64,000 bases of DNA from the IMG/VR virus record IMGVR_UViG_3300023174_000040, positions 1-64,000 of that record. One strand, written 5' to 3'. This document shows positions 33,620-52,634 of the stretch, one piece after another. Position numbers and translations under genes: made by a program. Every line of letters begins with the position of its first letter. The stretch's first letter is position 1. The notes under the pieces were generated by a model. That model worked only from the letters and a program-made list of their open reading frames with translations. It made no database searches and had not been told where the DNA came from.

Positions 33620-33636
33620 TTTCTTTTTGGTACGGT
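33620..33636 (+). promoter_or_regulatory. dispersed 17-bp motif, copy 1 (TTTC-Y5-GGTACGGT)
   Basis: TTTCTTTTTGGTACGGT; function unknown. Confidence 0.75.
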
Positions 33637-33690
33637 TGGACCAAGGAGAGTCGGCTGGATATTAAAATAATAAAATTATAAGGCATCGAA

Positions 33691-34776
33691 ATGCAACTTG
33701 AAAAGAAGTTTTTCAATTCTAATAACATTATAACTGAAGAAGATAAGGATTATTTCAAAGGTCTGGTGGATCCAGACAATCATGTTTCGCCTTTTTATGG
33801 TTTTGTGGGAAATCGAAAAGCCATATCCAAGCTTTCTATTATTGCTTTTGATGCTCTTCAAAAAGAGAATCACCTCTGCAGGGATATATCCCTCTGCATC
33901 ACAGGCCCGGCAAGTAGCGGAAAAACCTCTTTGGTGAGAAAGTTCGCCAAAGTGTTGCAGTTGCCCCTGGTTGAGATTAGCCCTAGAAGCATCACGAGTC
34001 TCGACGATTTAGTGGAACAGATTTCTATTTCTTTGTATAAAGAAAATATTCCCCTGGTCGAACAGGTCAAGGATAGCAATTCTTATATGCTTCCTCCGTG
34101 TATTATTTTTATTGATGAAGTTCATGCTCTAAGAAACAATATTGTTCAGGGTCTTCTAAAGGCCACTGAAACCAAGGATGCTATTCTAACAACCGAGTCT
34201 GGAAGCCATATTGACTGTTACAAGGCTTGTTGGATTATAGCCACAACAGACATAGGTAAAGTTTTTGATGCCTTTAGGTCGAGATTCAGTGGCCTAGAAC
34301 TTAAATATTTGACTAAGAAAGAAATTGGTCAGATAGTTCATCATAATTTTCCTGAATTACCTCAGAATGTTTGCGATTTGGTTGCGCACTATAATTCTAA
34401 GATACCAAGAAAAGCCATAGAATTTGCGAAATATATGAAACTTCACAGGTCTATGAATGGTTTTTCTTGGGAAGAAACAGCCAGAACCATTGCCGCAAAC
34501 GAGGGAATTGATGAACACGGGATGCACGAAACCCATCTGGCCATTTTGAAATATCTCTATAAATATAAGACTGTGGCCATGAAGAGGCTCCAGTACCTTC
34601 TCAATAAAAAGACGGAAGAAATAGACAAATATATTCTTCCTTGGCTGCTGGCGGATTCCGAAGACCAGCCCAGCCTTGTTTATGTCACCCCTAGAGGTCT
34701 AAGATTAACCAAGCAGGGCCGCAAAGAATTAATTAAAAGAAATCTTGTAGAGAAGAAAATTAAGGAAGTTGCCTGA
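33691..34776 (+). CDS. ruvB: RuvB-like Holliday junction branch-migration ATPase
   Basis: GPASSGKT; IFIDEVH; IATTD...AFRSRF; C-terminal P.L....L...TPRG winged-helix motif. Confidence 0.7.
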   Translation: MQLEKKFFNSNNIITEEDKDYFKGLVDPDNHVSPFYGFVGNRKAISKLSIIAFDALQKENHLCRDISLCITGPASSGKTSLVRKFAKVLQLPLVEISPRSITSLDDLVEQISISLYKENIPLVEQVKDSNSYMLPPCIIFIDEVHALRNNIVQGLLKATETKDAILTTESGSHIDCYKACWIIATTDIGKVFDAFRSRFSGLELKYLTKKEIGQIVHHNFPELPQNVCDLVAHYNSKIPRKAIEFAKYMKLHRSMNGFSWEETARTIAANEGIDEHGMHETHLAILKYLYKYKTVAMKRLQYLLNKKTEEIDKYILPWLLADSEDQPSLVYVTPRGLRLTKQGRKELIKRNLVEKKIKEVA

Positions 34777-34784
34777 ATATATAA
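34777..34784 (+). promoter_or_regulatory. putative late promoter ATATATAA
   Basis: 4 nt before ATG 34789. Confidence 0.5.
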
Positions 34785-34788
34785 ATTG

Positions 34789-35235
34789 ATGCAATTCCGA
34801 GAATACCTAGAAATGGCAAGTTTCATCTTGCCTCATAAACTCAGAATAGGGGACAGTGTTGTTTCCGCTGTGGATATGCAGTTTGAAAAACATCCCGCCA
34901 CTATTAACAGTGATGGCAGGGTTATGAACCAAGGTTCCAAATTTATAGCAAAAGTTCCACAATCCCCAGATTACCTATCCTATGACGGTCAAGGAAGCAG
35001 TGAATTTGTTAAAAAAGATAATCTAATAGATTATATTAAAAAAGGTTTTCATAAAATACCAGATAATTGGTGGAAAAAAGCAAATTTTATAACAAATGAA
35101 AGTGTTGGAAGTTTTAGTGTTGTTACCTGCAAAGATTTAAATAATCCGAATTTTCAGATTTGGGGCGCACTCTCAGATTTGAAATGTAAAAATCAAAAAA
35201 AGCTTAAATTAAAGAACCTTATTGACAAAAAATAA
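34789..35235 (+). CDS. hypothetical protein with CTS-like N-terminus
   Basis: MQFREYLEM; ATG 34789 preferred over TTG 34786. Confidence 0.7.
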   Translation: MQFREYLEMASFILPHKLRIGDSVVSAVDMQFEKHPATINSDGRVMNQGSKFIAKVPQSPDYLSYDGQGSSEFVKKDNLIDYIKKGFHKIPDNWWKKANFITNESVGSFSVVTCKDLNNPNFQIWGALSDLKCKNQKKLKLKNLIDKK

Positions 35236-35250
35236 ACCCTTTTATATAAT
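35222..35250 (+). promoter_or_regulatory. sigma70-type promoter
   Basis: TTGACA-17-TATAAT, perfect consensus. Confidence 0.8.
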
Positions 35251-35274
35251 AATCCTCTTCAAAGGAGGAATATT

Positions 35275-35544
35275 ATGGGTCCAATGCTTGAAGGCGTATC
35301 TGTTTGCAGAAAACAAAAACAATCACCAAATGTGGCACTTGCGTTAGTTGCTGCGATGATGTGCGGTAAAGACTTGGCTACAGACAAAGAATTGATGGAT
35401 TATTGTGAGAATTGGATTGAAGAACACGGCAAGATAACTTATAAAAAAGTATTTGACTTTGTTGAAAAATTGGGCTATGAAAGAGAGATTGCTGAAATTT
35501 CACTGTGTTTTGACTGGTCCCCTGATTTTGATCCGAACTGTTGA
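35275..35544 (+). CDS. hypothetical protein
   Basis: SD AGGAGG after a consensus promoter. Confidence 0.75.
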   Translation: MGPMLEGVSVCRKQKQSPNVALALVAAMMCGKDLATDKELMDYCENWIEEHGKITYKKVFDFVEKLGYEREIAEISLCFDWSPDFDPNC

Positions 35545-35702
35545 TCCATTATCTTCGTATTTGAAATAGTTGAAAATCATCCCATCTAGGAGACTCGCCT
35601 GTGTGATATATTAAGATTTTTATAAAAATATTGACTAAGAATGGAAGTTTTAGCCAATTTTAAATTTTAAAGGAATATAGTTTTTAACAAAGAGTTACTA
35701 CC

Positions 35703-36032
35703 ATGAAAATGAGAGATTATATTAATAACGGTTTTGAAAACAGGGAAAAGAAGATTGTTGAGAAGAGGGATTTCGTAAAGATTCCGGCTTTTCAATTAAA
35801 CAAGTTCCAAAGTGAATTCAATCTTAGTTTCAATCAGGAAATGGCTAAAATGTTGGCTGACGCTCTATTAAATAATGAGGATACCATTCAAAATAGAGGT
35901 CGAAATATTCCGCCTCCCCTATTCGCTCTTCTGACCAAATTAGAAGATATGCAGAAGAATAGGTTTTTTGATGATCGTGATGAAGGATATGATCGTGACG
36001 ATCGTCAAGAAGATGAATATTCTCCTCGATAA
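35703..36032 (+). CDS. hypothetical protein
   Basis: 109 aa ORF followed by a terminator. Confidence 0.7.
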   Translation: MKMRDYINNGFENREKKIVEKRDFVKIPAFQLNKFQSEFNLSFNQEMAKMLADALLNNEDTIQNRGRNIPPPLFALLTKLEDMQKNRFFDDRDEGYDRDDRQEDEYSPR

Positions 36033-36062
36033 CTTCTAATTAAAAAAACATATTTTTTAAAA

Positions 36063-36088
36063 CGCTGGAGCGATCCAGCGTTTTTTTT
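36063..36088 (+). terminator. intrinsic terminator
   Basis: CGCTGGA-GCGA-TCCAGCG followed by T8 (GNRA loop). Confidence 0.9.
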
Positions 36089-36143
36089 GCTTGCATACAA
36101 CAAACTAAATGATATAATAGATTCACACACGAAAGGTAAAATT

Positions 36144-36392
36144 ATGTCATACAATAAAGAATACAGAAGAGAAAAGGCAATTGAACGTCAAGAATTAAGA
36201 AATAAGAGAAGCCACTCTGAGCAACTTGCTGTTTTAGACAAGATTTTTGGAGTAGGTTTGGGGGCAAAAAAAGAGCGTGAACGCTTAGCCGGACTTATTA
36301 GCAATAAAAGTAAACCCAAAAAAGAAATTGAGTCTGACGCTTCCGAAGAAAAGCCAAAGAAGAAGAGAAAGAAGAAAAATCAAGATAGTTGA
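36144..36392 (+). CDS. small basic phage protein (start revised)
   Basis: MSYNKE...; QLAVLDKIFGVGLGAKKERERL motif; SD AAAGGT. Confidence 0.7.
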   Translation: MSYNKEYRREKAIERQELRNKRSHSEQLAVLDKIFGVGLGAKKERERLAGLISNKSKPKKEIESDASEEKPKKKRKKKNQDS

Positions 36393-37927: not shown

Positions 37928-37933
37928 ATATAA
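37926..37933 (+). promoter_or_regulatory. putative late promoter ATATATAA between head-to-head genes
   Basis: CAT-ATATAATAT-ATG. Confidence 0.55.
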
Positions 37934-37936
37934 TAT

Positions 37937-38530
37937 ATGCTTAGTTTTAAAGATTTTATCAACCAATCTCCTGCTCCTATGGAATTAGTCCAGAATATTA
38001 AAGTTAGTGAAAACTTAAAATATCACTTAGATAACAAGATATCTCTCTCGGAGAATATTTTCAGGTTATACAGTGAGTCATATTTTGATCTTATTAAAGA
38101 GGTCAGAGAATTGTATAATAAAAATATGATATCTATCAATGATGATGACCTCGAATTGGTATCCAGCGATGCAGGTGAAACAGCCGACTATAATGGGAAA
38201 ACTATTTATTTGGATTGCCCCGTTATTGACAACGAAATAAATGAAGCTGAGTATAAGGGAAAAAAAGTTCAATTGGGAAAACCCCATAGAACTCCTGGTG
38301 AAAACAAAAAATTTGCTGTTTATGTCAAATCGCCATCAGGAAATATAAAGAAAGTTCGTTTTGGAGATCCTAATTTAAAGATTAAAAATAATAACCCATC
38401 CCGAGCCAAGAGGTTTCGTGCAAGACACAAGTGCTCAGAAAAGAAAGATCGGACTACTCCTGGTTATTGGTCGTGCAATATAGCGAGATTTGCTAAATCT
38501 GTTGGTCTGGTTAGCTCGAGGACATGGTGA
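37937..38530 (+). CDS. conserved-looking phage protein with basic C-terminal domain
   Basis: KKFAVYVK...VRFGDP...RFRARHKC...GYWSC; MLSFKDFI start. Confidence 0.75.
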   Translation: MLSFKDFINQSPAPMELVQNIKVSENLKYHLDNKISLSENIFRLYSESYFDLIKEVRELYNKNMISINDDDLELVSSDAGETADYNGKTIYLDCPVIDNEINEAEYKGKKVQLGKPHRTPGENKKFAVYVKSPSGNIKKVRFGDPNLKIKNNNPSRAKRFRARHKCSEKKDRTTPGYWSCNIARFAKSVGLVSSRTW

Positions 38531-38531
38531 T

Positions 38532-38813
38532 ATGAAATTTCCTTTTGAAGAAGAAAAGATTAGTCCCAACACATTTGTTAGAACTTTTAAAGAAAATGTG
38601 CTAGATGATGATCTACAATGGCATTATGATAAAGAAGATAGAATTATCGAGTGCAATGAGGATACAGATTGGATGTTTCAATTTGATGATGAATTGCCAA
38701 TTCAAATAAAAGGACAGATATTCATTCCGAAAGACAAATGGCACAGACTCATAAAAGGAACAAAAGATCTGTCGGTTGTCGTAAAAAAAAGCCTTCCTGA
38801 AAAAATTTTTTAG
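38532..38813 (+). CDS. cupin-like phage protein (start revised)
   Basis: WHYDKEDR...WMFQFDDELP...IPKDKWHRLIKG. Confidence 0.65.
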   Translation: MKFPFEEEKISPNTFVRTFKENVLDDDLQWHYDKEDRIIECNEDTDWMFQFDDELPIQIKGQIFIPKDKWHRLIKGTKDLSVVVKKSLPEKIF

Positions 38814-38819
38814 GGGGGC

Positions 38820-38847
38820 TTGACAAGCTTGAAAAATCTGCTATTTT
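38820..38847 (+). promoter_or_regulatory. sigma70-type promoter
   Basis: TTGACA-16-TATTTT. Confidence 0.5.
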
Positions 38848-38872
38848 CTCGCAGCCCCCATAAATGGGGATG

Positions 38873-38889
38873 TTTCTTTCTGGTACGGT
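38873..38889 (+). promoter_or_regulatory. 17-bp motif, copy 2
   Basis: TTTCTTTCTGGTACGGT. Confidence 0.75.
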
Positions 38890-39012
38890 TGAATCACACT
38901 GCCTAGTCGGGGGACTGATTTTGGAAAGGATTTCCACCCCTGACATCTTTTTCATTTGCAAAGAATTTTCATTTGCACAGCCCCTCGGCTAGGCAGAAAT
39001 AAATCCCATAAG

Positions 39013-39029
39013 TTTCCCTCTGGTACGGT
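39013..39029 (+). promoter_or_regulatory. 17-bp motif, copy 3
   Basis: TTTCCCTCTGGTACGGT. Confidence 0.75.
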
Positions 39030-39063
39030 TGGTCAAGAATGGGGCAGAAATAAATCCCATAAG

Positions 39064-39080
39064 TTTCCCTCTGGTACGGT
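39064..39080 (+). promoter_or_regulatory. 17-bp motif, copy 4
   Basis: TTTCCCTCTGGTACGGT. Confidence 0.75.
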
Positions 39081-39133
39081 TGGTGACGACGGGTTCAAGG
39101 AATGGCCGACACTACAAATAAAAGGACAAAATA

Positions 39134-40213
39134 ATGTACTATATTTTTACCGACAAAGAAAACAATCATCTTTTGAAGATCGAAAAGACTCGTGGAAGAA
39201 CCAAGAGTGGATTCACTCAGAAGTCGGATGGCAATTGGTATAAGATTGTTACGCCTGAAGAACTCAGAGTTATTGTAAATTCCAAAATTACAAATTTTGA
39301 GGAGATAGAAGGTGAATACGAAATCGGTGAACCCAAAGATGGTTCTTTTCAATCAAGGTTCTTGAGTGAAAGCAGGATCGAAGGTGGGGTATTTTATCCC
39401 AAACCCGATCCTTCTTATATCTCTGGGACAAATGTATCCAATCTATTTAAGAATTTGGATAAGCTCAGTGAGATATCCCCTCAGAATATTCGCTTAGTTG
39501 GTCCTCATGGTTGTGGTAAGACCGAATTGGCTATCCAATATGCGGCACAATATAATATGCCAATTCTTATTATGGATTGTGCTAATCTTCGTGAGCCAAG
39601 AGATTGGTTTGGTCATAAGACCGCTAAGGATGGCTCTGTATATTGGAAAGAAAGCCAGTTTGATAAGTGCATCACAAGTGGTGGCCATGTAATTCTTTTG
39701 GATGAAATCAATAGAACTTCTCCAAATGTTTTGAATACTTTGCTTCCATTATTGGACGATAGGAGATTCACCTATCTGGAAGAAAAGGGAGATATCATTA
39801 AGGTTGGCAAAAAGACAGTATTTTTTGCGACCATGAATGAAGGTGCAGGATATACAGGGGCGTCCAGTGTAGATTTTGCTCTTGAAGATAGATTCCCAAG
39901 ACTAATTGAGCTTAATTATCTCTTGAACAGCCAGGAAATCCAACTGCTCATTAGTAGGACTGGCATTGCAAAGTCTGATGCTAATAAGTTGGTGGATATA
40001 GCAACTACTATTAGGAAGAAAAATATGGGCCTTGATGCTTCGTTCTCCAAGAGCGTTAGCACAAGGCAGCTAATATCCATCGCACAGGATTTTGTTGTTG
40101 GTGGAGTTCCAACACTCGAATATACTTTGACCAATCATTTTAGCAGCGAAGGCGGCAGAGAGAGTGAACGAGCCGCAATCCTTCAAATGATTCAAGGAAA
40201 GTGGGGCAATTGA
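39134..40213 (+). CDS. MoxR/CbbQ/CobS-like AAA+ ATPase
   Basis: GPHGCGKT; ILLDEINR; FATMN.G.GY.G...D.AL.DRF; VSTRQL. Confidence 0.88.
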   Translation: MYYIFTDKENNHLLKIEKTRGRTKSGFTQKSDGNWYKIVTPEELRVIVNSKITNFEEIEGEYEIGEPKDGSFQSRFLSESRIEGGVFYPKPDPSYISGTNVSNLFKNLDKLSEISPQNIRLVGPHGCGKTELAIQYAAQYNMPILIMDCANLREPRDWFGHKTAKDGSVYWKESQFDKCITSGGHVILLDEINRTSPNVLNTLLPLLDDRRFTYLEEKGDIIKVGKKTVFFATMNEGAGYTGASSVDFALEDRFPRLIELNYLLNSQEIQLLISRTGIAKSDANKLVDIATTIRKKNMGLDASFSKSVSTRQLISIAQDFVVGGVPTLEYTLTNHFSSEGGRESERAAILQMIQGKWGN

Positions 40214-40214: not shown

Positions 40215-42140
40215 ATGGCATTTAATTCTTCAGAATATAATGTGAATTATTCTCCCACTAGTATTTGGACAAAGAAATTAGGAATCTTTGATTATCAAGA
40301 AAAGACAGATAACAAGAACAAATGTTTGTCTCTGCTCAGGCAATTAAACAGATCCGCCAATATTATTTTGAATGATGGAGAAAATGAGAAGAATGTAAAA
40401 GTATCGTTTAGTAGTGGTGAAGAATCCAACAGTGTCTGTAAAAATGATATCTTCATTAGTCCTGATGATTTTCTTAATTCTAAGGATGAGTTCATAGTAG
40501 ATGCTCTTACCGGTAAAGTTTTATTGGCAACTCAACTTAAGAGATCTGTAGATAAAAATACTTGGAAAAAAGTTAAACTTGAGTCTAGGCTCGGCGGCAA
40601 GCGAAAGGGTTCCGATTTCGATTCTTGCAAGAATATTTGGCAGGCAATAGAGCAGTTCGTTGCAAGAGAAGAAGTAATTAAAAATTGGGAAGGCTTTGTT
40701 CCCTACTTTGTAAAACATTCAGAAAATTACATCTCAGAGAAGGACAAGATTCAAAGTCTATTGAATAAAACTTTCGACATAGATGGTTTTTCTTCTATGT
40801 TTGCTTGGAATATTCTTTTTTCTGAGAATTCACTAAAGATCCCCTTTCAGTATTCTGAATTATACGAAAAGTGCAAAAAACTTCTCGATATAGATAATTT
40901 GCCAGCCGATAAAAGGTGGGAATTTAGTAAAAAAGTTGTTGATATTGCTAAAGAATATTTCAAAGAAAATTCAAGTCACTCAGGTAATCAAGAATCCACA
41001 AAAGATTCAGATGAATCTAAGGAAGACTCAAACAACTCGGGTAATTCCGGTAATTCCGATCAAGAATCCACAGAAGATTCAGATGAATCTAAGGAAGACT
41101 CAAACAACTCGGGTAATTCCGGTAATTCCGATCAAGAATCCACAGAAGATTTAGACGAATCTAATGAGTCAGAATCGGAATTTGACAACTACAAAATAAC
41201 AGATAATGAACTTTTCGGAGATAAAGTTAAAAATAAAAGTTTTTCTGAGGCAAAAACTATTGATGTAGAAGCTCCTCAAGAAGAAGATTATGTTTGTCGT
41301 ATTTACGAGAATTGTGCCGAGCCGTTAGAGCCAAAATTTATTTTTAAAAATGAAAACAAGAAAAATCTATTGTTGAGAGAGAAGTATCTGAAAAAATTTA
41401 AGAAAGAAATTCAATCAATAAGCAAGTGTTTGCTTTTTAGAAATACAGATTCTTCTGTTGAAGATTATGGGCATGAGAATGGAGCCATAGATGAAAACAG
41501 TCTTCATAAGCTCGCCTATAACGACTATAGAATATATTCTGAAAAGACAATAAAATCTAAGAAAAATATTGCAATCTGTCTTTTAGTTGATGAAAGCGGC
41601 TCTATGATGGATAGACATAGAATAAATTTGGCAAAAGAGGTTGCTTTTGTTTTATCTGAGGCCATGAAATCTGTCAGCGGTTTGAAAGTCTGTATATATG
41701 GACATACCGCACAAACCGAAAACAACGAAGACATTGATATTACTTGCTACAAGACTTTTGATCAACAAGATACCTCAAGTATTTTTGAAATGAACGCCAA
41801 GCAGCAGAATCTTGATGGTCATGCCATTAAATATGTTGCGAAAAAATTTGCTGAGGATTCTTTTTCTTTTGATAAAAGAATTATGTTTATTATTTCCGAT
41901 GGAGAGCCAGAAGGATATGGCTATGGCGGAAGTCCTGCCATTAAGCACACCGGTAGTGTTTGTGAATTTTGTCGTAAAAAAATGTCTATTGACATAATCG
42001 GTATTGGTATCGACAATGCTTTTTCTACGACCACAGCCGAAAAACTATATGGAAAAAACAAAAGTATTGTTTTAGATGATGTCAAGAAGTCCCTGTCTGT
42101 TATGTCAAGATACATAAGACAGATAAGCCTTAGGATGTAA
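40215..42140 (+). CDS. VWA-domain partner (CobT/NorD-like)
   Basis: MIDAS LVDESGS; NLDGHAI; ISDGEP; adjacent to the MoxR-type ATPase. Confidence 0.85.
   Translation: MAFNSSEYNVNYSPTSIWTKKLGIFDYQEKTDNKNKCLSLLRQLNRSANIILNDGENEKNVKVSFSSGEESNSVCKNDIFISPDDFLNSKDEFIVDALTGKVLLATQLKRSVDKNTWKKVKLESRLGGKRKGSDFDSCKNIWQAIEQFVAREEVIKNWEGFVPYFVKHSENYISEKDKIQSLLNKTFDIDGFSSMFAWNILFSENSLKIPFQYSELYEKCKKLLDIDNLPADKRWEFSKKVVDIAKEYFKENSSHSGNQESTKDSDESKEDSNNSGNSGNSDQESTEDSDESKEDSNNSGNSGNSDQESTEDLDESNESESEFDNYKITDNELFGDKVKNKSFSEAKTIDVEAPQEEDYVCRIYENCAEPLEPKFIFKNENKKNLLLREKYLKKFKKEIQSISKCLLFRNTDSSVEDYGHENGAIDENSLHKLAYNDYRIYSEKTIKSKKNIAICLLVDESGSMMDRHRINLAKEVAFVLSEAMKSVSGLKVCIYGHTAQTENNEDIDITCYKTFDQQDTSSIFEMNAKQQNLDGHAIKYVAKKFAEDSFSFDKRIMFIISDGEPEGYGYGGSPAIKHTGSVCEFCRKKMSIDIIGIGIDNAFSTTTAEKLYGKNKSIVLDDVKKSLSVMSRYIRQISLRM
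40987..41149. repeat. 72-bp tandem repeat (about 2.3 copies) in the low-complexity linker of the VWA protein
   Basis: ATCAAGAATCCACA... at 40987, 41059 and 41131; unit QESTEDSDESKEDSNNSGNSGNSD. Confidence 0.9.
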
Positions 42141-42225: not shown

Positions 42226-42969
42226 ATGTCAAAGGACGGCAGAGGGCGAAAAGAACATGAACTAAAGAAGATGTGTCGTGAACGTGCGGAGGTTCGCAAT
42301 GCTCTCTTTGAATTGGCGTCTTCTATGAGACGAATGACTGATCTTGTTAGTCATCTCGTTTCTAATGGTATCAACGTTGAAGCCGAGATTATCAAGGTCA
42401 AGAGCATTAGTGTCCCCACCCTCACCAGCATTCTTGGCGAGCATGGGCACACTAGGCAGAAGGGTCGTCCCAAGGGGACTGGTAGCACTTCGTGGATCAA
42501 CAACCCACAGGCTATTAAGATCGTCGCAGATGTTCTCAGGAATCATGGACTTCACAAGGGTCGTGAGAAACTCCTTGAAGAAGGAATCGATTGTAAGAAC
42601 GAGAATGGTGAAAATGAACACTATTCATTTGTTGGCGATAATGGTAAGAAACTCTTGAGCATTACAACTCTAAGAGAAATTGCCAAAGATAATGGGATCA
42701 CCTTCGCAGTTGGTCCTAAATCGTCATCTTCTTCATCCTCTGTTGTTGAGGATCGTTATGACGAAGATGATGATGATGACGAAGATGATGAAGACGAAGA
42801 TGATGAAGACGAAGATGATGAAGACGATGATGATGATATCGAAGATGCCGAAGATGCAGAAGAAGATACCGAAGAAGATGATGAAGATATCGAAGAAGTC
42901 GAAGACGATGATGAAGACTTCGATGATGATATCGATGATTTTGAAGACGAGGATGAAGAGGACGAATAG
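42226..42969 (+). CDS. putative nucleic-acid-binding protein with AT-hook-like motif and 73-aa Asp/Glu tail
   Basis: KGRPKG; TLREIAKDNG; acidic tail encoded at 42748-42966. Confidence 0.8.
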   Translation: MSKDGRGRKEHELKKMCRERAEVRNALFELASSMRRMTDLVSHLVSNGINVEAEIIKVKSISVPTLTSILGEHGHTRQKGRPKGTGSTSWINNPQAIKIVADVLRNHGLHKGREKLLEEGIDCKNENGENEHYSFVGDNGKKLLSITTLREIAKDNGITFAVGPKSSSSSSSVVEDRYDEDDDDDEDDEDEDDEDEDDEDDDDDIEDAEDAEEDTEEDDEDIEEVEDDDEDFDDDIDDFEDEDEEDE

Positions 42970-42995: not shown

Positions 42996-43012
42996 TTTCC
43001 TTCCGGTACGGT
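42996..43012 (+). promoter_or_regulatory. 17-bp motif, copy 5
   Basis: TTTCCTTCCGGTACGGT. Confidence 0.75.
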
Positions 43013-43024
43013 TCCATCTTGTTG

Positions 43025-43073
43025 GTTTCTCCCTCCTTCCTGTGTAAAAATGGGAAGGGGGGAGAAACTTTTT
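43025..43073 (+). terminator. long-stem intrinsic terminator
   Basis: 17-bp stem GTTTCTCCCTCCTTCCT/GGGAAGGGGGGAGAAAC (two G-U pairs) followed by T5. Confidence 0.85.
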
Positions 43074-45283: not shown

Positions 45284-45288
45284 AAGAG

Positions 45289-45305
45289 TTTCTTTTTGGT
45301 ACGGT
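45289..45305 (+). promoter_or_regulatory. 17-bp motif, copy 6
   Basis: TTTCTTTTTGGTACGGT, 8 nt before ATG 45314. Confidence 0.75.
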
Positions 45306-45313
45306 AGAAGTTC

Positions 45314-45622
45314 ATGGAAATAGATGTAACAAAAATTTTAGCTGAACTTATGTCTAATGCTTGCCGAGATTCTTTGGAAGACAAGAAATACGGTTGCAGA
45401 GAATATCATATAGAATCCATCTTAGTAGATAATGAAACTAATCCTTGGCAATTTACCTTAAAATATTACAAGGATGAAAGTATGAGGCCCACTAAGATCA
45501 AGCGTAACTTAAATTATGTCCAAACTATTGAGATGCTTACTCGTGCTATAGCAGAATTAGCGTCTCAGACTTTGCAGAATTCATTGCCCCGACGCCGCAA
45601 CCTTGAGAAAATTTGTTGTTGA
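45314..45622 (+). CDS. hypothetical protein
   Basis: 102 aa ORF. Confidence 0.65.
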   Translation: MEIDVTKILAELMSNACRDSLEDKKYGCREYHIESILVDNETNPWQFTLKYYKDESMRPTKIKRNLNYVQTIEMLTRAIAELASQTLQNSLPRRRNLEKICC

Positions 45623-46082: not shown

Positions 46083-46097
46083 CAATTTCTTGAAAAA

Positions 46098-46185: not shown

Positions 46186-47004
46186 ATGGATGTAATGGTT
46201 GTTGACAATAAGGCTAATGTTGATATTGAGCCTGCAAGTAAATCTCAAACATACTACTTGTTCCTGCTCACTGGCTTGGATTCAAGAAATTGCAATCTAA
46301 GTAAAAAAGAATGTTTCGAATTGATTGCCTTATGGAAAGGCAATAAAAGAGAAGATCAAGAATTTGTTTATGATTTCTTGATTACAAAAAATGCGGTTGT
46401 TCGTCGTAAAAAGAGTTTTCCAAAAAATAACACAAAGAAGGGCGCTATTATGAATAAGTTTAGTCGTAAAGAAACTTACGAGAGAATTGACGGTCTTGTT
46501 AACGCAAAGAAGAGTTGGGATTATATTGTTAAGATCTTGAACAAAGAAGGTCATGCAACTAATCGAATTAGTGTTGGCAAATGGACCGTTAAAGGTTCGT
46601 ACGATTTTTATCGTAGAACTCAGCCTGAGCGTCCCACCGGAGTCAGAAAGGTTCAGCAGGAACGAAGGCTTGAAATGTGTGAACTGCTCAATAGCGGCAA
46701 GACAATCAAAGAAATTGCTGCCCAATTTAATATTTGCGATGTGGCTGTGCGTAGTGCGATTAAAACCGCCCTGCGTAAGAATGAAGCTGTCATAGACGCC
46801 AAATATAGTTTTGGTAAGAATGCAAAGCGGAGTAGGAGCAAGAACAAGAACAAGAAAGTTCTGACCCAGAAAACTGTTTTAAAGCCCAGTTTTCCCGCTT
46901 TTGCCATTTCAGAAATGAAGTCTGTATTGGATAGCATTCTTGATTCCAATATGGACAACAGTTCTAAACTGGCCATCATTAAAACTGTGTTGAGTCAAAA
47001 GTAA
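46186..47004 (+). CDS. multi-HTH DNA-binding protein (putative regulator)
   Basis: SGKTIKEIAAQFNICDVAVRSAI HTH; LNKEGH.T...G.W recombinase-type HTH; basic tail. Confidence 0.65.
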   Translation: MDVMVVDNKANVDIEPASKSQTYYLFLLTGLDSRNCNLSKKECFELIALWKGNKREDQEFVYDFLITKNAVVRRKKSFPKNNTKKGAIMNKFSRKETYERIDGLVNAKKSWDYIVKILNKEGHATNRISVGKWTVKGSYDFYRRTQPERPTGVRKVQQERRLEMCELLNSGKTIKEIAAQFNICDVAVRSAIKTALRKNEAVIDAKYSFGKNAKRSRSKNKNKKVLTQKTVLKPSFPAFAISEMKSVLDSILDSNMDNSSKLAIIKTVLSQK

Positions 47005-47006
47005 TA

Positions 47007-47138: not shown

Positions 47139-47210
47139 GAACGATGCGATCTGCGGCTTGTCGGGCTCCCGATTTTGTAACCACAATCAGTTGGTGAAAG
47201 GAATACTATT

Positions 47211-47774: not shown

Positions 47775-47855
47775 GACAAGAATAGAAAAATAAACCTTAA
47801 TATCTGGGTACGTTGGTGGGATAGACTGGATAGAAAACACTGATTCTTGATCTTG

Positions 47856-47872
47856 TTTCTTTCCGGTACGGT
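47856..47872 (+). promoter_or_regulatory. 17-bp motif, copy 7
   Basis: TTTCTTTCCGGTACGGT. Confidence 0.75.
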
Positions 47873-47913
47873 TTGGTGTTGGTCCGTTAAAACACCTTCT
47901 TGCAAAGATATTT

Positions 47914-49188
47914 ATGATTTTAAATAAAATAAAAAAATTATCGGATCTTCTTAAAGATACATCTTCAAGTTTAGATAAAGTAAAAATATTAAAAACTCAT
48001 CTTGAAGATGATGATCTAAAAAAACTGGTGATGTATGTTTACAATCCGTATTACCAGTTTTATATTACAAGCAGTGTTTGCGAAAAGAATGGTTCACTGA
48101 AAGGAAAATCTTTCAATGACGTCTTTGAATTGCTTGATAATCTAAGAAAAAGAATTGTCACGGGACACGAAGCAATTGGCTGCGTGAATTCTTTTATTGA
48201 AAAAAATCCTGATCACAAGGATATTTTATTCAATATCTTGGACAAGGATCTTAAAACAAGAATAGCAGAAAAAACTATCAATAAGGCAATTCCTGGACTC
48301 ATCCCTGAGTTTGAAGTTGCTCTTGCTGAAAAGCATGAAAAAGATTTAGATTTTTCTTCTAGCGACTACTACGCCAGCAGGAAATTAGATGGATGCCGAT
48401 GTATTGTTGTTATTGATGAAAACGGCAATGCAACCTCCTATAGCAGGCAAGGTAAAATTTTCACCACGCTTTCTGTTCTTGAAAAAGAAGTTCAAAACTT
48501 GGGTCTTAAGAATGTCGTCCTAGATGGTGAAGTTTGTATCTTCAAGGATGGCATTGAAGACTTCCAAGGTATTATGAAATTAATTAGGAAAAAGGATTAT
48601 TCGATTCCTTTTCCTGTTTACAAAATATTTGATTTTCTTAGTGCAGAAGAATTTTATAATAAAAAAGGAAAGTTAAATCTCGAGGATAGATTATCTCTTC
48701 TTGAGAAGAATATCCCCAAAGATAATAAATTCCTTCATATATTGCATCAGGAAATCGTTAAAGATGATGACCACTTTAAAAAGCTATTGAAGGAAGCGGA
48801 TGATAGTAATTGGGAAGGCTTGATGCTTCGATTAAATTCAACATATAAAGGCAAAAGAACAAAAGAGCTATTAAAATGCAAGACATTCTTTGATGCTGAG
48901 TACGTTGTAAAGGATGTTGAATTTGGACCTATTCATCAAGTTGTTGACGGAAAAGAGATAGAAGAAGTAATGCTGAGTTGTGTTACTATAGAACACAAGG
49001 GGTTTCCTGTTAGGGTAGGCAGCGGATGGAACGTAGAAGAAAGAAGAGAGTATTATAAAAATCCTAAAAAGATTATCGGCAAAACAATCACTGTAAAGTA
49101 TTTCGCAGAATCTACCAATCAAGATGGTGGGCTTAGTTTGAGGTTTCCTGTTTTTAAGTGTCTATACGACGGAGAACGAGATGTCTGA
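47914..49188 (+). CDS. ATP-dependent DNA ligase
   Basis: KLDGCR, LDGE, YKIFD, EGLMLR, LLKCK, GSG and LRFPVF motifs. Confidence 0.95.
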   Translation: MILNKIKKLSDLLKDTSSSLDKVKILKTHLEDDDLKKLVMYVYNPYYQFYITSSVCEKNGSLKGKSFNDVFELLDNLRKRIVTGHEAIGCVNSFIEKNPDHKDILFNILDKDLKTRIAEKTINKAIPGLIPEFEVALAEKHEKDLDFSSSDYYASRKLDGCRCIVVIDENGNATSYSRQGKIFTTLSVLEKEVQNLGLKNVVLDGEVCIFKDGIEDFQGIMKLIRKKDYSIPFPVYKIFDFLSAEEFYNKKGKLNLEDRLSLLEKNIPKDNKFLHILHQEIVKDDDHFKKLLKEADDSNWEGLMLRLNSTYKGKRTKELLKCKTFFDAEYVVKDVEFGPIHQVVDGKEIEEVMLSCVTIEHKGFPVRVGSGWNVEERREYYKNPKKIIGKTITVKYFAESTNQDGGLSLRFPVFKCLYDGERDV

Positions 49189-49528
49189 CTTTGATGGGGG
49201 ATACCCTGTTTATATCCTAGATGACGACACAGTTCTTCATGTTAAAGAAGATAAAAACCATACAGAATTTTGGGAAGAAGTTGTCGCCCCAATAGTAGCC
49301 AATAAATACAAAGTATCACTCTCCAATATAATCAATCTTCCTTATTGCCAAAGAAGGGCGAGAATCGTTGGAGATTGTTTTTATTTTGGAGAAAAGATTA
49401 CAAAAAAGCTTCTTAAAAAGATCGAAAAGACAGTAGGGCATAAATTAAGACATGCCTACGATGAGCACGAAACTAGATGCGATATCAGCGTATCTGAGTT
49501 TCGTTCTAATATCCCATATCAACAATAA
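49181..49528 (+). CDS. hypothetical protein
   Basis: Overlaps the ligase stop. Confidence 0.65.
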   Translation: MSDFDGGYPVYILDDDTVLHVKEDKNHTEFWEEVVAPIVANKYKVSLSNIINLPYCQRRARIVGDCFYFGEKITKKLLKKIEKTVGHKLRHAYDEHETRCDISVSEFRSNIPYQQ

Positions 49529-50135
49529 CGTATCTGTCACCAGTATCAAGAATATTATCCTGATAGTCAGTTAGTGATATTCCATAAAATCTTTCGAGTT
49601 GGAATAGACTTTCGAACATTTCGGCTAATTTATTATGTTCTTCATCCGTATTCTTCTTGTATAGATTCAATATATCTTGCTGCTTTCTATTGCCACCAGA
49701 GTTCAGCCAGTCTTTGGCCTTTTGAAATTGTCCTCCAAGAGCAAGCATATAAAAATGATTAGTTGAATAATCCATTGGTTTTCCAATAATTTTTTCAACT
49801 AAAATCGCAAGAGATTCATTTGGCTTGGTTGCTACCGTTTTAAAACTTGTCTTATCTGGCCATGGATAAATTTTAACAACGTTGCTACTCTTTATCTTTT
49901 GAGCCCTTATTATATTTTGAACGTCTTCCTTGTGGGATGTTATTTTTATTAGGATATTGCTGTTTTCTGGATGTTGGTATAGAGTGGCAAAACTTCCTTC
50001 GTTTACTTTTACCAATGGTTTTTTGAACCCTAGCAGTTTGGCAACGTTCGTTTTTTGAGTTTGATGCTTTTGTGAAAAAGCTTTTTCGCTATCATCTTCT
50101 AATTCTTCTTTTATTATCCACTCTTTAAAATTCAT
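49506..50135 (-). CDS. protein-kinase-like fold protein with CTS-like N-terminus
   Basis: EGSFATLY (Gly loop), LIKIT, D-x4-NIL catalytic loop, IVDMG. Confidence 0.7.
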   Translation of the reverse strand: MNFKEWIIKEELEDDSEKAFSQKHQTQKTNVAKLLGFKKPLVKVNEGSFATLYQHPENSNILIKITSHKEDVQNIIRAQKIKSSNVVKIYPWPDKTSFKTVATKPNESLAILVEKIIGKPMDYSTNHFYMLALGGQFQKAKDWLNSGGNRKQQDILNLYKKNTDEEHNKLAEMFESLFQLERFYGISLTDYQDNILDTGDRYVIVDMGY

Positions 50136-50138
50136 ACA

Positions 50139-50146
50139 TTATATAT
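50139..50146 (-). promoter_or_regulatory. putative late promoter ATATATAA, 3 nt before the kinase ATG
   Basis: CAT-ATATAATGT-ATG on the - strand. Confidence 0.55.
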
Positions 50147-51059
50147 GAACATTAGATACGGAATTTGTTGTATTATTCTCTCGTTAGAGGAAAATGATCC
50201 TCCAAAGAAATTTCAAAGAATGACTTATAAAAAGTTTAGTCAAACTCCAAGAGAAGAGGCCGTGACTGAACTTAGCAAAAGAATACTCAATAATATTGAT
50301 GTTACATTCAATGCTATAAAGTATTGTAAAGAACGTAATTTTAATTATAGGCTAAGTAGCGACTTATTTTCATTGATAACGTATGATAAGGCCGATTTAT
50401 CGCTAGAGCAATTGCCGGATTATGATAAAATAATTGATCTTTTCAAGCAGATAAAAGAATATAATGCTGTGAACAGTGTTAGGATAAGCCTGCACCCTGA
50501 TCAATTCAATGTCCTTGCCAGCAAAGATGAAAATGCTTTATCAAGAACTATTAAGGAATTAAATTTTTATAGCTGGGTTATGGATCAAATTGGATGCTCT
50601 GCTGATTATAACTCCCCTATAAACCTTCATATAAATAACAATCAGGATAGTTGTGAGGAGATAATCGATAGGCTATCTGCTAGTTTAGATATATTGGATG
50701 ACAATTGCAGGTCTAGGATAGTTTTTGAGAATGACGATAAAACAAAGTGTTGGAGTGTAAAAAAACTATCTGGATTTTATTATAAAAAATTTAATTCGCC
50801 AATTACTTTCGACTTTCTCCATCACAAATGCCACCCGGACGGATTATCGGAGAAAGAGGCGTTCGAACTCTGCTGTCACTCTTGGGGCAGTTTTAAGCCC
50901 CTGTTCCACTACAGTGAGTCTCGGGATGAAAAGAATCCAAGAGCACACGCAGACTATCCTTCAAATATTCCCAGCTTTTACGACAGCGAAATTGACATAG
51001 ATTTTGAGTTTAAGAAAAAAGAAAAAGCTATTGAAAAATTCATTACTCTAAACCATTAG
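50145..51059 (+). CDS. uvsE: UV-damage endonuclease
   Basis: YRLSSDLF, SLHPDQFNVLAS, FENDD, TFDFLHH, PLFHYSES, AHADY. Confidence 0.92.
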   Translation: MNIRYGICCIILSLEENDPPKKFQRMTYKKFSQTPREEAVTELSKRILNNIDVTFNAIKYCKERNFNYRLSSDLFSLITYDKADLSLEQLPDYDKIIDLFKQIKEYNAVNSVRISLHPDQFNVLASKDENALSRTIKELNFYSWVMDQIGCSADYNSPINLHINNNQDSCEEIIDRLSASLDILDDNCRSRIVFENDDKTKCWSVKKLSGFYYKKFNSPITFDFLHHKCHPDGLSEKEAFELCCHSWGSFKPLFHYSESRDEKNPRAHADYPSNIPSFYDSEIDIDFEFKKKEKAIEKFITLNH

Positions 51060-52581
51060 ATATTTTATAATTATCTGTTAAGGTTTCCATTATATCTTTA
51101 TTTTCATAATTCTCAGATCTGACTGAATCTGGATGTGGCATATGAATTATACATGGTTTGTTATGGTTTAAATATTTTCTTTCCAAACCAATGCCAGTTA
51201 ATCTATTGAATATATCGCAATCTTCATATCCATAATTTTTCATCAATTCGTTATATCCGCCTATTTTTATCAAATTTTCTCTGTGAACATAAAGGAATCC
51301 GTGTAAATATCTAATAAATCCCATATCATTGTCGATCAGGAAATCTTCCCAGTTACCTGTTAGAAACTCATTTTTTTTAATTTTATATTCTTGAAAAAAG
51401 TCGTAATATGGATTTAAAATATAATCCACATCCATTTTTATAATCAAGTCGCCACAGGTATTTTTTATTGCTAAATTTGGTGCTTTTACAACTGAAAAGT
51501 ATTTTTCATTTTCTACCCTGATTACTTTAATCCGATTATCCAACTTTGATAGGTAAGATATGTCTTCATCTGAGGACCAATCTACTATTACATATTCTTT
51601 TATATCTTTATGTTTTATCCATGATTGAATAGATATTTTCAGCATATCAGTTCTGTTCTTAACAGAACAAATCAATGAAATAGTTTCTTCTTTTTTTGGA
51701 ACTAATTTTACTTCTTGTTTTTTTGCTATAATTAATGGAATTTTATTTATCTTTGAGGAGATGTATGAAAAGCTACTCCAATTTGATCCTATTATTTTTT
51801 TTGTTCCAGACAATAACATCATATCAATCAATGCATCTTTTTGACCTGGTTTACTTTCTAAATGATTTATGTTTTTAAAAAACTTTTTATCTTTGTTCCA
51901 TAATAAATTTGGAAATTTATTTACAAAATAGTTGTTGGTATCCTCACAGTCTGTTGATAAGAAAAAATTACAATCTGGATTTGCTTCCATTTCTTCATTT
52001 ATTTTAATCACAAATGACTCATTATCGGAAATGCCAAACTTGTCTTTCCATGGACTTGTTGTTGAGTCTCCTCTTCTTATGTGAATCCCTATGGTATTTT
52101 TATTAAAAGACTTTCTTATATTCTTTATTTTATTTTGTATTTCTGGTTTGAATTTTAAACTTTTAATGAAGTCATACTTGCCATAATTGTGCCACAAAGA
52201 ACTTAGCATGTATTCAATGCAAGAATCGCCACAATAACAAAAAGAATTTTTTTTAATAAAATCAATTATTGAATTTTGTTCAATTTCTTGAACATATTCG
52301 TCTGGATTTTTTTCATTTTTGTAAACCACCCTGTCTAGATTAAAATTATCTTTGCTGAATTCTTCATATTCTTTTTCATTTATGAATTTTAATTTTGTTT
52401 TTTGAAACAAGTCGTAGAATTTCTCATCAGACCACCCTGCTCCCCCACCCCAGAGAACTCTTAATTCGAAATTATTCTCTTCTGCAAAATTGTAAAAAGA
52501 ATTCAAAGTGCGCAATCTATTTGCCAATCCATGTTTTACTTTGATGCAAATAATTCTATTAGAAGGCTCCATATCTCTCAT
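51043..52581 (-). CDS. bifunctional glycosyltransferase: alpha-fucosyltransferase-like (GT11/NodZ type) + GT2/GT7-like
   Basis: GLANRL, IGIHIRRGD, FLSTD, SSFS; then VIVDWSS, MDVD, GGYNE..KNYGYED. Confidence 0.8.
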   Translation of the reverse strand: MRDMEPSNRIICIKVKHGLANRLRTLNSFYNFAEENNFELRVLWGGGAGWSDEKFYDLFQKTKLKFINEKEYEEFSKDNFNLDRVVYKNEKNPDEYVQEIEQNSIIDFIKKNSFCYCGDSCIEYMLSSLWHNYGKYDFIKSLKFKPEIQNKIKNIRKSFNKNTIGIHIRRGDSTTSPWKDKFGISDNESFVIKINEEMEANPDCNFFLSTDCEDTNNYFVNKFPNLLWNKDKKFFKNINHLESKPGQKDALIDMMLLSGTKKIIGSNWSSFSYISSKINKIPLIIAKKQEVKLVPKKEETISLICSVKNRTDMLKISIQSWIKHKDIKEYVIVDWSSDEDISYLSKLDNRIKVIRVENEKYFSVVKAPNLAIKNTCGDLIIKMDVDYILNPYYDFFQEYKIKKNEFLTGNWEDFLIDNDMGFIRYLHGFLYVHRENLIKIGGYNELMKNYGYEDCDIFNRLTGIGLERKYLNHNKPCIIHMPHPDSVRSENYENKDIMETLTDNYKISNGLE

Positions 52582-52617
52582 AAGAGGATTGAATTTTTAA
52601 TTTTTTACCCCTCTCGG

Positions 52618-52634
52618 TTTCCTTTTGGTACGGT
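52618..52634 (+). promoter_or_regulatory. 17-bp motif, copy 8
   Basis: TTTCCTTTTGGTACGGT in a divergent intergenic gap. Confidence 0.75.

What the first reader, a model, noticed from the sequence alone, without database searches (positions are those of the whole stretch)
33620..52634. Strand-specific 17-bp motif TTTC-Y5-GGTACGGT, eight intergenic copies
Copies lie at 33620, 38873, 39013, 39064, 42996, 45289, 47856 and 52618. All are on the + strand, non-coding, upstream of + strand genes and confined to the early/middle region, with a fixed 5-pyrimidine spacer. My rough estimate is under one chance hit of the 8-mer core alone in such AT-rich DNA. The motif is not palindromic. Two copies lie 25-36 nt downstream of sigma70 -10 boxes, one precedes a strong terminator, and one sits in a divergent gap with no obvious sigma70 promoter. 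Candidates: a phage middle promoter or activator site, or a nascent-RNA antitermination/pause element analogous to nut/ops. I do not recognise it as a described element.
Basis: partly seen in the sequence, partly recalled or inferred. Interest (0 to 1): 0.85.

Follow-up and report, generated by a model that had tools for sequence, protein, structure and literature searches.

The report
Jumbo-phage promoter family with GGTACGGT core
The eight repeats are real and belong to a family of at least 60 same-direction sites in an uncultured 323-kb freshwater phage; they look like that phage's own promoters, starting transcription nine bases downstream, though the enzyme or factor that reads them was not found.

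Summary
In detail: eight exact copies, all on the + strand, none with one or two mismatches, and none expected by chance. The window is bases 1-64000 of a 323,267-bp uncultured phage contig. In the 286 kb I could read, the invariant core GGTACGGT occurs 60 times on the + strand, all between 33.6 and 184.2 kb. It sits almost always in gaps upstream of same-strand genes and tRNAs. The ninth base after the core is a purine in 36/37, 25/26 and 18/18 copies across three related genomes, and the base before it is rarely G. Gene-opening ATGs lie either exactly at that purine (7 genes, no Shine-Dalgarno) or at least 11 nt further on. In a relative, the core and that spacing are kept while the flanks diverge. 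There is no shared RNA fold and no Rfam match, and only 1 of 69 copies precedes a terminator. Copies also occur in divergent gaps that have no other promoter. Best reading: a phage-specific promoter class interleaved with host sigma70-like promoters. The phage-promoter option is supported; the nut/ops-like option is not. No RNA polymerase or sigma gene was recognised. This is a new member of a known kind, inferred from sequence only.

The parts
33619..33645 (+). Promoter-like site 1 (class A): G + TTTCTTTTT + GGTACGGT (core 33629-33636), with the predicted start G at 33645. It lies in a divergent gap, 46 nt before ORF 33691-34776 (AAA/RuvB-like ATPase).
38872..38898 (+). Promoter-like site 2 (core 38882-38889), with the predicted start A at 38898. 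The predicted transcript opens with a very stable roughly 100-nt structure.
39012..39038 (+). Promoter-like site 3 (core 39022-39029, predicted start 39038). It is the first copy of a 42-nt stretch repeated 51 nt later.
39063..39089 (+). Promoter-like site 4 (core 39073-39080, predicted start 39089). It lies 45 nt before ORF 39134-40213 (CobS/MoxR-like AAA ATPase), which is followed by a CobT/VWA-like ORF at 40215-42140.
42996..43021 (+). Promoter-like site 5 (core 43005-43012, predicted start G at 43021). It lies between the stop of ORF 42226-42969 and the hairpin/T-run at 43024-43069. It is the only copy of 69 with this layout, and it lacks the upstream G.
45288..45314 (+). Promoter-like site 6 (core 45298-45305). 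The predicted start at 45314 is the A of the ATG of ORF 45314-45622, so the predicted mRNA is leaderless. There is no Shine-Dalgarno sequence.
47855..47881 (+). Promoter-like site 7 (core 47865-47872, predicted start 47881), 33 nt before ORF 47914-49188 (ATP-dependent DNA ligase).
52617..52643 (+). Promoter-like site 8 (core 52627-52634, predicted start 52643). It lies in the 88-nt divergent gap between ORF 51043-52581 (-) and ORF 52670-53263 (+). No + strand sigma70-like site is nearby.
33556..33583 (+). Host-type sigma70-like promoter (TTGACA-16-TAGAAT) upstream of site 1. It is an example of the second promoter class interleaved on the same strand.
38820..38847 (+). Host-type sigma70-like promoter (TTGACA-16-TATTTT, with TG) upstream of site 2. 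A short hairpin follows at 38856-38869.
43024..43069 (+). Terminator-like hairpin of 20 pairs followed by a T-run, starting 3 nt after the predicted start of site 5.
38899..38996 (+). Predicted structured RNA that begins at +2 of the site-2 transcript. It closes with a 15-bp stem (MFE -46 kcal/mol, z = -6.5) and has no Rfam match.

Best explanation
The motif is the recognition element of a phage-specific promoter class in an uncultured 323-kb jumbo phage.

The conserved block is (G)TTTC-YYTYY-GGTACGGT-(TG) in the window. A second upstream variant, G.T.GWWTYY, is found in the gene-dense 168-184 kb zone. The block is read as double-stranded or locally melted DNA. Transcription starts at the purine 9 nt after the core, so the invariant GGTACGGT covers about -16 to -9. 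Roughly six unconstrained bases then separate the block from a pyrimidine(-1)/purine(+1) start.

About 60 to 75 such promoters drive most of a 150-kb block of small early/middle-type genes, tRNAs and nucleotide-metabolism or repair genes, all in one direction. They are interleaved with host sigma70-type promoters, much as early and middle promoters are interleaved in T4. Some transcripts are leaderless, with the ATG at +1.

Shown from sequence: the motif statistics, its placement, the start-site signature, the bimodal ATG spacing, and conservation in relatives.

Inferred: that it is a promoter, the exact start site, and the timing.

Not resolved: what reads it. My estimate is host RNA polymerase redirected by an unrecognised phage specificity factor (about half). 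The embedded TACGGT keeps the T-A-n-n-n-T skeleton of a -10 element. The other option is a divergent phage RNA polymerase (about a quarter).
For: 1. Non-random and strand-specific. There are 8/8 copies on + in the window against 0 expected. There are 60 exact cores on + between 33.6 and 184.2 kb, and none on + elsewhere in the 286 kb read. The relatives behave the same way.

2. Orientation follows genes, not a genome strand. Contig 1253 and a copy at about 217 kb carry the motif on the other strand, upstream of genes on that strand.

3. Intergenic placement. 41 of 59 cores are fully intergenic where 16.6% of the sequence is intergenic by a crude ORF call (p = 2.6e-19). Only 3-4 lie inside long same-strand ORFs.

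4. Start-site signature. The 9th base after the core is a purine in 36/37, 25/26 and 18/18 copies. G is nearly absent at the 8th base.

5. Bimodal ATG spacing. ORF-opening ATGs after the core fall at exactly offset 8 in 7 genes. One falls at offset 10, none at any other offset from 0 to 18, and the rest at 19 or more. This means leaders of either 0 nt or at least 11 nt, long enough to hold a Shine-Dalgarno sequence.

6. Ortholog pairs against contig 1253. The core is 9/9 identical at every position while the upstream flank is near random. The 8-nt spacing to the ATG is kept while the spacer sequence changes.

7. tRNA-Lys starts 4 nt after the predicted start.

8. The structured RNA at 38899-38996 begins at +2 of a predicted transcript.

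9. Copies occur in divergent gaps as often as in co-directional gaps (7/21 against 30/91). One such gap has no other promoter candidate.

10. There is no consensus RNA structure and no Rfam match.

11. The geometry matches mapped jumbo-phage virion-RNAP early promoters: an extended conserved element, 6 unconstrained bases, then a purine start (PMC5312081).

12. Strong sigma70-like sites are interleaved on the same strand across the same region.
Against: No transcript data exist, so the promoter role and the start site rest on sequence statistics alone.

No RNA polymerase or sigma factor was recognised in the roughly 286 kb read. Pfam (precomputed labels or my own scans) covered most called genes, PHROGs covered about 48 ORFs, and catalytic-motif regexes covered most fetched tiles.

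One copy abuts the 5' end of a predicted tRNA-Ser. The inferred start there would fall inside the tRNA.

The 42996 copy would start a transcript that immediately forms a terminator-like hairpin with a U-run.

The GC-rich CGG inside a -10-like element is unusual for sigma70-type melting.

A test for 5'-terminal hairpins starting at the predicted +1 gave no peak.
Confidence: 0.66

Rival explanations
1. Orientation-dependent binding site for a phage DNA-binding regulator. The model is the 'stoperator' sites of cluster A mycobacteriophages, or an activator site. A protein bound at about 60 intergenic sites would block or modulate RNA polymerase arriving from host-type promoters, rather than start transcription itself.
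For: The sites are asymmetric, intergenic, numerous, and oriented with transcription. Two window copies lie just downstream of sigma70-like promoters. An early-region protein (46186-47004) has a sub-threshold LuxR/sigma-r4-type helix-turn-helix. The stoperator comparison rests on my own knowledge of phage L5 and relatives.
Against: A roadblock site predicts neither the pyrimidine/purine signature at a fixed distance nor start codons exactly on that purine with conserved spacing. Most copies have no sigma70-like site just upstream. Some + strand units in divergent gaps would then have no promoter at all. No integrase or repressor was seen to suggest a temperate lifestyle.
Confidence: 0.12
2. 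An RNA-level element in polycistronic transcripts. It would be either a nut/put/ops-like antitermination or pause signal, or a recognition site for an endoribonuclease that cuts about 9 nt downstream. Cutting would generate the 5' ends, including the leaderless ones.
For: The motif is strand-specific and lies in what would be 5' leaders or intercistronic RNA. The Y-only spacer would tolerate C/U if it paired with G. One copy precedes a strong terminator. Two copies lie 25-36 nt after sigma70-like -10 boxes. One copy abuts a tRNA 5' end.
Against: Only 1 of 69 copies is followed by a terminator-like site. The density of about one per small gene in the 168-184 kb zone is far above operon-level antitermination signals. 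RNAalifold finds no consensus structure and Rfam has no hit. Copies sit in divergent gaps with no upstream promoter. No NusG/KOW or N-like gene appeared in the Pfam labels. Pyrimidine(-1)/purine(+1) is the classic initiation preference.
Confidence: 0.1
3. A promoter read by unmodified host RNA polymerase with one of the host's own alternative sigma factors. In that case the motif reflects host regulon mimicry rather than phage-encoded specificity.
For: No phage sigma or RNA polymerase was found (the same calls as listed above). TACGGT keeps the T, A and final T of a -10 hexamer. Two tRNA-proximal copies have TTGACG 16 nt upstream of TACGGT.
Against: No -35-type element is conserved at any spacing. 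The 18-20 bp contiguous block with invariant CGG does not match any sigma consensus I know. The host is unknown, so this cannot be checked. More distant relatives lack the motif, and one has a different repeated motif of its own, which suggests lineage-specific phage specificity.
Confidence: 0.1

Closest known systems
Early promoters of phiKZ-related jumbo phages read by the virion RNA polymerase (AR9: AAATATATATTAT-(6N)-G+1; PMC5312081)
   Same: Both have an extended, very strictly conserved element, then about 6 unconstrained bases, then a purine start. Both occur in dozens of copies in front of early genes, and single deviations are apparently not tolerated.
   Different: Those elements are AT-rich, whereas this one has a GC-rich invariant core. 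Those phages encode two sets of split beta/beta' subunits. No DxDGD-type catalytic motif or RNA polymerase family hit was found in the roughly 286 of 323 kb read here. AR9 leaders are 26-491 nt long, while several here are predicted to be leaderless.
T4 early/middle promoter organisation (sigma70 early promoters interleaved with MotA/AsiA-dependent middle promoters)
   Same: Two promoter classes are interleaved on one strand across the pre-replicative gene block. One class is host-type and the other is phage-specific. This comparison rests on my own knowledge of T4.
   Different: A T4 middle promoter is a MotA box at about -30 plus a normal sigma70 -10. Here one contiguous block covers about -26 to -7, and no TATAAT-like element follows. 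No MotA or AsiA homologue was detected.
Promoters of single-subunit phage RNA polymerases (T7, T3, SP6, Syn5 type)
   Same: Both are contiguous, highly conserved, asymmetric elements of about 18-20 bp, present in many copies and specific to a lineage.
   Different: T7-type promoters are conserved right through the start site (-17 to +6). Here the last 6 or so bases before the inferred start are free. No T7-like polymerase family hit or motif was found (and the Pfam labels).
Stoperators of cluster A mycobacteriophages and start-associated sequences of cluster K
   Same: Both are asymmetric 13-17 bp intergenic repeats, present in tens of copies, oriented with transcription and close to gene starts. 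This comparison rests on my own knowledge.
   Different: Those are repressor-binding or translation-linked sites in temperate siphoviruses. They have no fixed-distance purine and no bimodal 0 or at-least-11 nt leader pattern.
ops / lambda nut antitermination signals
   Same: Both are short, strand-specific and non-palindromic, and lie in leader regions.
   Different: Those occur a few times per genome, act ahead of terminators, and need RfaH/NusG-type or N proteins. Here there are at least 60 copies, only 1 of 69 lies ahead of a terminator, and no such protein was seen.

Membership tests
Bacterial sigma70-type promoter | -35 TTGACA-like and -10 TATAAT-like hexamers 16-18 bp apart | tested here: not met
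   No conserved element lies 16-18 bp upstream of the embedded TACGGT (logos). Only T, A and the final T of the hexamer match. Genuine sigma70-like sites exist separately in the same region.
phiKZ/AR9-type virion-RNAP early promoter | Extended, strictly conserved element followed by about 6 free bases and a purine start | tested here: met
   Conservation runs to TG at +8/+9 of the core. Six low-information positions follow, then a purine in 36/37, 25/26 and 18/18 copies. The comparison is with PMC5312081. The start site here is inferred, not mapped.
phiKZ/AR9-type virion-RNAP early promoter | AT-rich element | tested here: not met
   The core is GGTACGGT, with a pyrimidine tract upstream.
phiKZ/AR9-type virion-RNAP early promoter | Genome encodes split multisubunit RNA polymerase subunits | tested here: inconclusive
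   No RNA polymerase Pfam or PHROG hit and no D-x-D-G-D motif were found in ORFs from about 286 of 323 kb. About 37 kb was not seen, and divergent subunits can escape these tests.
T7-type single-subunit RNAP promoter | Conserved block continuous through the start site, with a T7-like RNAP gene present | tested here: not met
   A gap of 6-8 nt of low information lies before the inferred start. No T7-like polymerase family or motif was found (and Pfam labels). The gene search is incomplete.
T4 MotA-dependent middle promoter | MotA box centred near -30 plus a sigma70 -10 element 11-13 bp downstream | tested here: not met
   No TAnnnT element lies at a fixed distance downstream of the block, and the sequence is unrelated to the MotA box. 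The MotA box consensus is from my own knowledge.
nut/ops-type antitermination element | Lies in a transcribed leader ahead of terminators, occurs a few times per genome, and has a cognate N or NusG-family protein | tested here: not met
   Only 1 of 69 copies lies ahead of a terminator-like site. There are at least 60 copies. Copies occur in promoter-less divergent gaps. No NGN/KOW family appeared in the Pfam labels.
Structured cis-regulatory RNA (Rfam-type) | Conserved secondary structure, or a match to a known covariance model | tested here: not met
   Rfam gave no match at gathering threshold for the whole window, nor at E<=1 for 38800-39200. RNAalifold on 55 copies in register gave no structure, with energy 0.0.
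Repressor 'stoperator' sites | Same sequence as the operator of the early lytic promoter, bound by the phage repressor, in a temperate phage | not testable with these tools
   No repressor or integrase was identified, and no binding data exist. The fixed spacing to start codons is not expected for this family.

The most novel reading that the evidence does not exclude
The phage carries a transcription-specificity system that current profile libraries cannot recognise. It would be either a new sigma-like or appropriator protein, or a highly divergent RNA polymerase. This system would read a GC-rich 18-20 bp promoter at about -26 to -7 and produce many leaderless mRNAs. Related freshwater jumbo phages would each have evolved their own promoter word; one example is AACACCTGATGTTTAT in contig 3300010885_076238.
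Probability: 0.35. Interest if true: 0.65.

Novelty: new member of a known kind. Interest (0 to 1): 0.45.

Why it matters
If these are promoters, one short word maps about 60-75 transcription units and start sites in an uncultured 323-kb phage. It splits the genome into a 150-kb early/middle block and a late block without any culture. It also predicts a set of leaderless genes. The motif is a handle for finding the protein that reads it, and no recognisable RNA polymerase or sigma was seen in almost 90% of the genome. That protein could be a new way of redirecting or replacing host transcription. The motif could also serve as an orthogonal promoter part once its reader is known. If it is only a lineage-specific promoter read by a conventional factor hidden in the unseen 37 kb, it is useful annotation but unsurprising.

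Tried and rejected
1. Rfam and tRNA scans of the window found nothing.

2. Megablast of 10 kb against 50,697 phage records gave no match. tblastn with the CobS-like protein gave hits of at most 34% identity, so there is no cultured relative.

3. A text search for the core string returned only primer-type hits.

4. I first suspected that the minus-strand ORFs next to some copies were transposases or homing genes and that the motif was an element end. Pfam shows an AAA ATPase, a glycosyltransferase and a sulfotransferase instead. The TnpB genes elsewhere have no consistent relation to the motif.

5. I considered sigma54 (-24/-12), ECF, SigB/F-type, Bacteroidetes -33/-7 and NtcA (GTA-N8-TAC) layouts by eye. 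The spacings do not fit, and the genome has Shine-Dalgarno sites and TTGACA/TATAAT sites. All were rejected from my own knowledge plus the logos.

6. T4-late TATAAATA has 18 hits against 9.4 expected, mostly inside genes, so it is not a clear class.

7. The test for hairpins starting exactly at the predicted +1 gave no peak and is uninformative.

8. The hunt for the polymerase or sigma used 12 context look-ups and 5 locus scans along the contig, covering 1-64, 66-88 and 95-291 kb. It also used Pfam and PHROG scans, PDB sequence searches of five large ORFs, and catalytic-motif regexes. Nothing was found. The 1843-aa ORF is glycine/alanine-rich with hydrophobic repeats, like a tape measure protein.

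10. The AlphaFold model of the HTH protein 46186-47004 was too poor (pLDDT 61, pTM 0.26) to search by fold.

11. Single-hit contigs from the collection scan (about 23) match the number expected by chance for that pattern, by my own rough estimate, and were ignored.

Full report
**Observation.** The pattern TTTC-Y5-GGTACGGT occurs exactly eight times in the window, at the coordinates given. All copies are on the + strand, and 100 dinucleotide-preserving shuffles gave none. The 8-mer core alone gives the same eight hits against 0.33 expected. Allowing up to three mismatches adds only three 3-mismatch hits and no 1- or 2-mismatch copies. The motif is therefore sharply bounded, not the tip of a degenerate family. 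Sigma70-like sites end 36 and 25 nt before two copies. A 20-pair hairpin with a T-run follows the 42996 copy. The 52618 copy sits in a divergent gap with no nearby + strand sigma70-like site.

**Where the window comes from.** A scan of the viral contig collection for the motif returned many hits on two large contigs. The locus list shows that the window is bases 1-64000 of IMGVR_UViG_3300023174_000040, which is JGI Ga0214921_10000024 (323,267 bp).
- Close relatives are a 251-kb contig (3300027963_000035), with all copies on its minus strand, and several ENA contigs.
- A somewhat more distant relative is contig 3300048670_001253.
- There is no cultured relative: megablast gave no hit, and the best tblastn hits were at most 34% identical.
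- Gene content is typical of a large phage: tail-like and RCC1-repeat giants, CobS/CobT-like ATPases, DNA and RNA ligases, UvdE, glycosyl- and sulfotransferases, tRNAs, a terminase and a primase.

**The motif is part of a larger family.** I pieced together about 286 kb of the genome from the window and fetched loci. It holds 60 exact GGTACGGT cores on the + strand, all between 33.6 and 184.2 kb. None lie in 1-33 kb or in 185-291 kb on that strand.
- Density peaks at 168-184 kb, with about 30 copies, roughly one per small gene. A few variants there start with A or T instead of the first G.
- The dense zone uses a different upstream half, 'class B', roughly G.T.GWWTYY.
- Both classes share T at -3, pyrimidines at -2/-1, and the invariant core.
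- Orientation follows genes rather than a genome strand. Contig 1253 has copies on both strands, each upstream of a gene on that strand. A close relative has a full class-A copy on the opposite strand at about 217 kb, again upstream of a co-oriented gene.

**Placement.** By a crude ORF call, 41 of 59 cores are fully intergenic where 16.6% of the sequence is intergenic (p = 2.6e-19). By a more careful look, only 3-4 lie inside long same-strand ORFs. Copies precede protein genes and tRNA-Lys. They occur in divergent gaps about as often as in co-directional gaps (7/21 against 30/91). They therefore do not depend on transcription arriving from upstream.

**Start-site signature.** Aligning copies on the core shows conservation from 10 nt upstream to 2 nt downstream. 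About six low-information positions follow, then a purine at the 9th base after the core in 36/37, 25/26 and 18/18 copies in three genomes. G is almost absent at the 8th base. This is the pyrimidine(-1)/purine(+1) preference of transcription initiation.
- ATG codons that open ORFs of at least 50 codons are bimodally placed. Seven sit exactly on that purine, at offset 8 and with no Shine-Dalgarno sequence. One sits at offset 10, none at any other offset from 0 to 18, and the rest at 19 or more. Leaders are therefore either 0 nt or at least 11 nt, long enough for a ribosome-binding site. In the window, this is ORF 45314-45622.
- In nine orthologous pairs against contig 1253, the core is identical at every position while upstream flanks are near random. 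In two leaderless pairs the 8-nt spacing is kept although the spacer sequence differs.
- tRNA-Lys begins 4 nt after the predicted start.
- A very stable predicted RNA structure at 38899-38996 (-46 kcal/mol, z = -6.5) begins at +2 of the site-2 transcript.

**Evidence against an RNA element.** Rfam has no match. RNAalifold on 55 copies in register gives no consensus structure. No NusG/KOW-type or N-like protein appears among the Pfam labels of the early region. The copy number and density are far above what operon-level antitermination signals show.

**Two promoter classes.** Strong sigma70-like sites (at least 11 of 12 matches, including perfect TTGACA-17-TATAAT) are spread over the same 25-186 kb region and are almost all on the + strand. 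The picture is a 150-kb one-directional block of early/middle-type genes served by host-type promoters and the GGTACGGT class, interleaved. This resembles the T4 arrangement of early and middle promoters (my own knowledge). The geometry also matches the mapped virion-polymerase early promoters of AR9, phiKZ and phiR1-37: a conserved block, about six free bases, then a purine start (PMC5312081). Those elements, however, are AT-rich.

**Who reads it.** This is unresolved. I walked the contig with 12 context look-ups and 5 locus scans, covering 1-64, 66-88 and 95-291 kb. No RNA polymerase or sigma family appeared in the precomputed Pfam labels or in my own Pfam and PHROG scans. No D-x-D-G-D or T7-type motif appeared in ORFs.
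- A phiKZ-like double set of split polymerase subunits would very likely have been seen.
- A single divergent polymerase or a small sigma-like or appropriator protein could easily be missed.
- The embedded TACGGT keeps the T, A and final T of a -10 hexamer. With an 8-nt discriminator this is compatible with a sigma-type mechanism.
- I therefore lean towards host polymerase plus an unrecognised phage factor, but this is inference.
- The protein from 46186-47004 has a sub-threshold LuxR/sigma-region-4-like helix-turn-helix. Its homologues are confined to this clade, and the AlphaFold model was too poor to use.
- More distant relatives, found through the CobS-like gene, lack the motif. One has its own repeated, strand-specific intergenic word. 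This fits lineage-specific promoter/reader pairs.

**Loose ends.**
- One class-B-like copy abuts the 5' end of a predicted tRNA-Ser with an odd ACT anticodon. The inferred start there would fall inside the tRNA, so that copy either serves the downstream gene or the tRNA call is wrong.
- The 42996 copy would start a transcript that immediately forms the 43024-43069 hairpin and U-run. It may make a short RNA, act as an attenuator, or show that motif-started polymerase ignores this terminator.
- A test for 5'-terminal hairpins at the predicted +1 was uninformative.

**Verdict.** The best explanation is a phage-specific promoter class with the start 9 nt after the core (confidence about 0.66). This is a new member of a known kind. 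Its main interest is that the cognate polymerase or factor is not recognisable. Everything about function is inferred from sequence, and 5'-end mapping would settle it.

Noticed in passing
window 6444, 11043, 21286, 34777, 37926 (+); 50146, 56644 (-): A second promoter-like word, ATATATA, lies 4-5 nt before ATG. There are 8 hits against 0.9 expected, and 7 of them sit on ORF start codons, on both strands. These genes lack the GGTACGGT motif and include RCC1-repeat and tail-like proteins. It may be a late class that also gives leaderless mRNAs.
   Followed up: partly
window 38899-38996 (+): A roughly 100-nt predicted RNA closes with a 15-bp stem (MFE -46 kcal/mol, z = -6.5). It lies between promoter-like sites 2 and 3 and has no Rfam match. 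It could be a small non-coding RNA or a structured leader.
   Followed up: partly
window 38992-39084 (+): A 42-nt stretch that contains the whole motif is repeated 51 nt later (copies at 39013 and 39064). This gives three promoter-like sites in tandem ahead of the CobS/CobT-like pair. TRF does not report it because there are fewer than two full periods.
   Followed up: partly
L054 7535-7570, L054 12401-12436, L051 about 9378 (contig about 173.9, 178.8 and 146.6 kb): A recurrent hairpin starts at the predicted +1 (GTTSCGAC...GSAAC). Copies differ by an apparent compensatory G-C to C-G swap. It could be a repeated 5' stem-loop or a small RNA family.
   Followed up: no
L010 7611-7699 (contig about 172.3 kb): A predicted tRNA-Ser with the unusual anticodon ACT begins directly after a GGTACGGT core.
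   Followed up: no
L050 7037-8203 and 12850-14046 (contig about 122 and 128 kb), minus strand: Two TnpB/IS605 OrfB-type genes (Cas12f-like TNB domain) are inserted against the direction of the early block. One is followed by two motif copies in the divergent gap.
   Followed up: no
L258 1382, 8941, 13888, 15917, 18711, 20462 (+): A distant relative (contig 3300010885_076238, 204 kb, 41.5% GC) lacks the GGTACGGT family. It has its own repeated, strand-specific word, AACACCTGATGTTTAT, with six copies in 20 kb.
   Followed up: partly
L022 about 700-760: In contig 1253 a motif copy and its reverse complement form a 13-bp perfect inverted repeat around an AT-rich loop. This could be back-to-back promoters or a hairpin.
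   Followed up: no
window 6455-10915 and 12241-16428 (+): Two giant ORFs (1486 and 1395 aa) carry RCC1-like repeats. ORFs 6455 and 11054 share near-identical 5' ends and upstream sequence.
   Followed up: no
L175 10001-10861 (contig about 233.3-234.2 kb): A 287-aa family-2 glycosyltransferase has relatives at 60-72% identity in more than 370 viral contigs. The phage therefore belongs to a large, widespread environmental clade.
   Followed up: no
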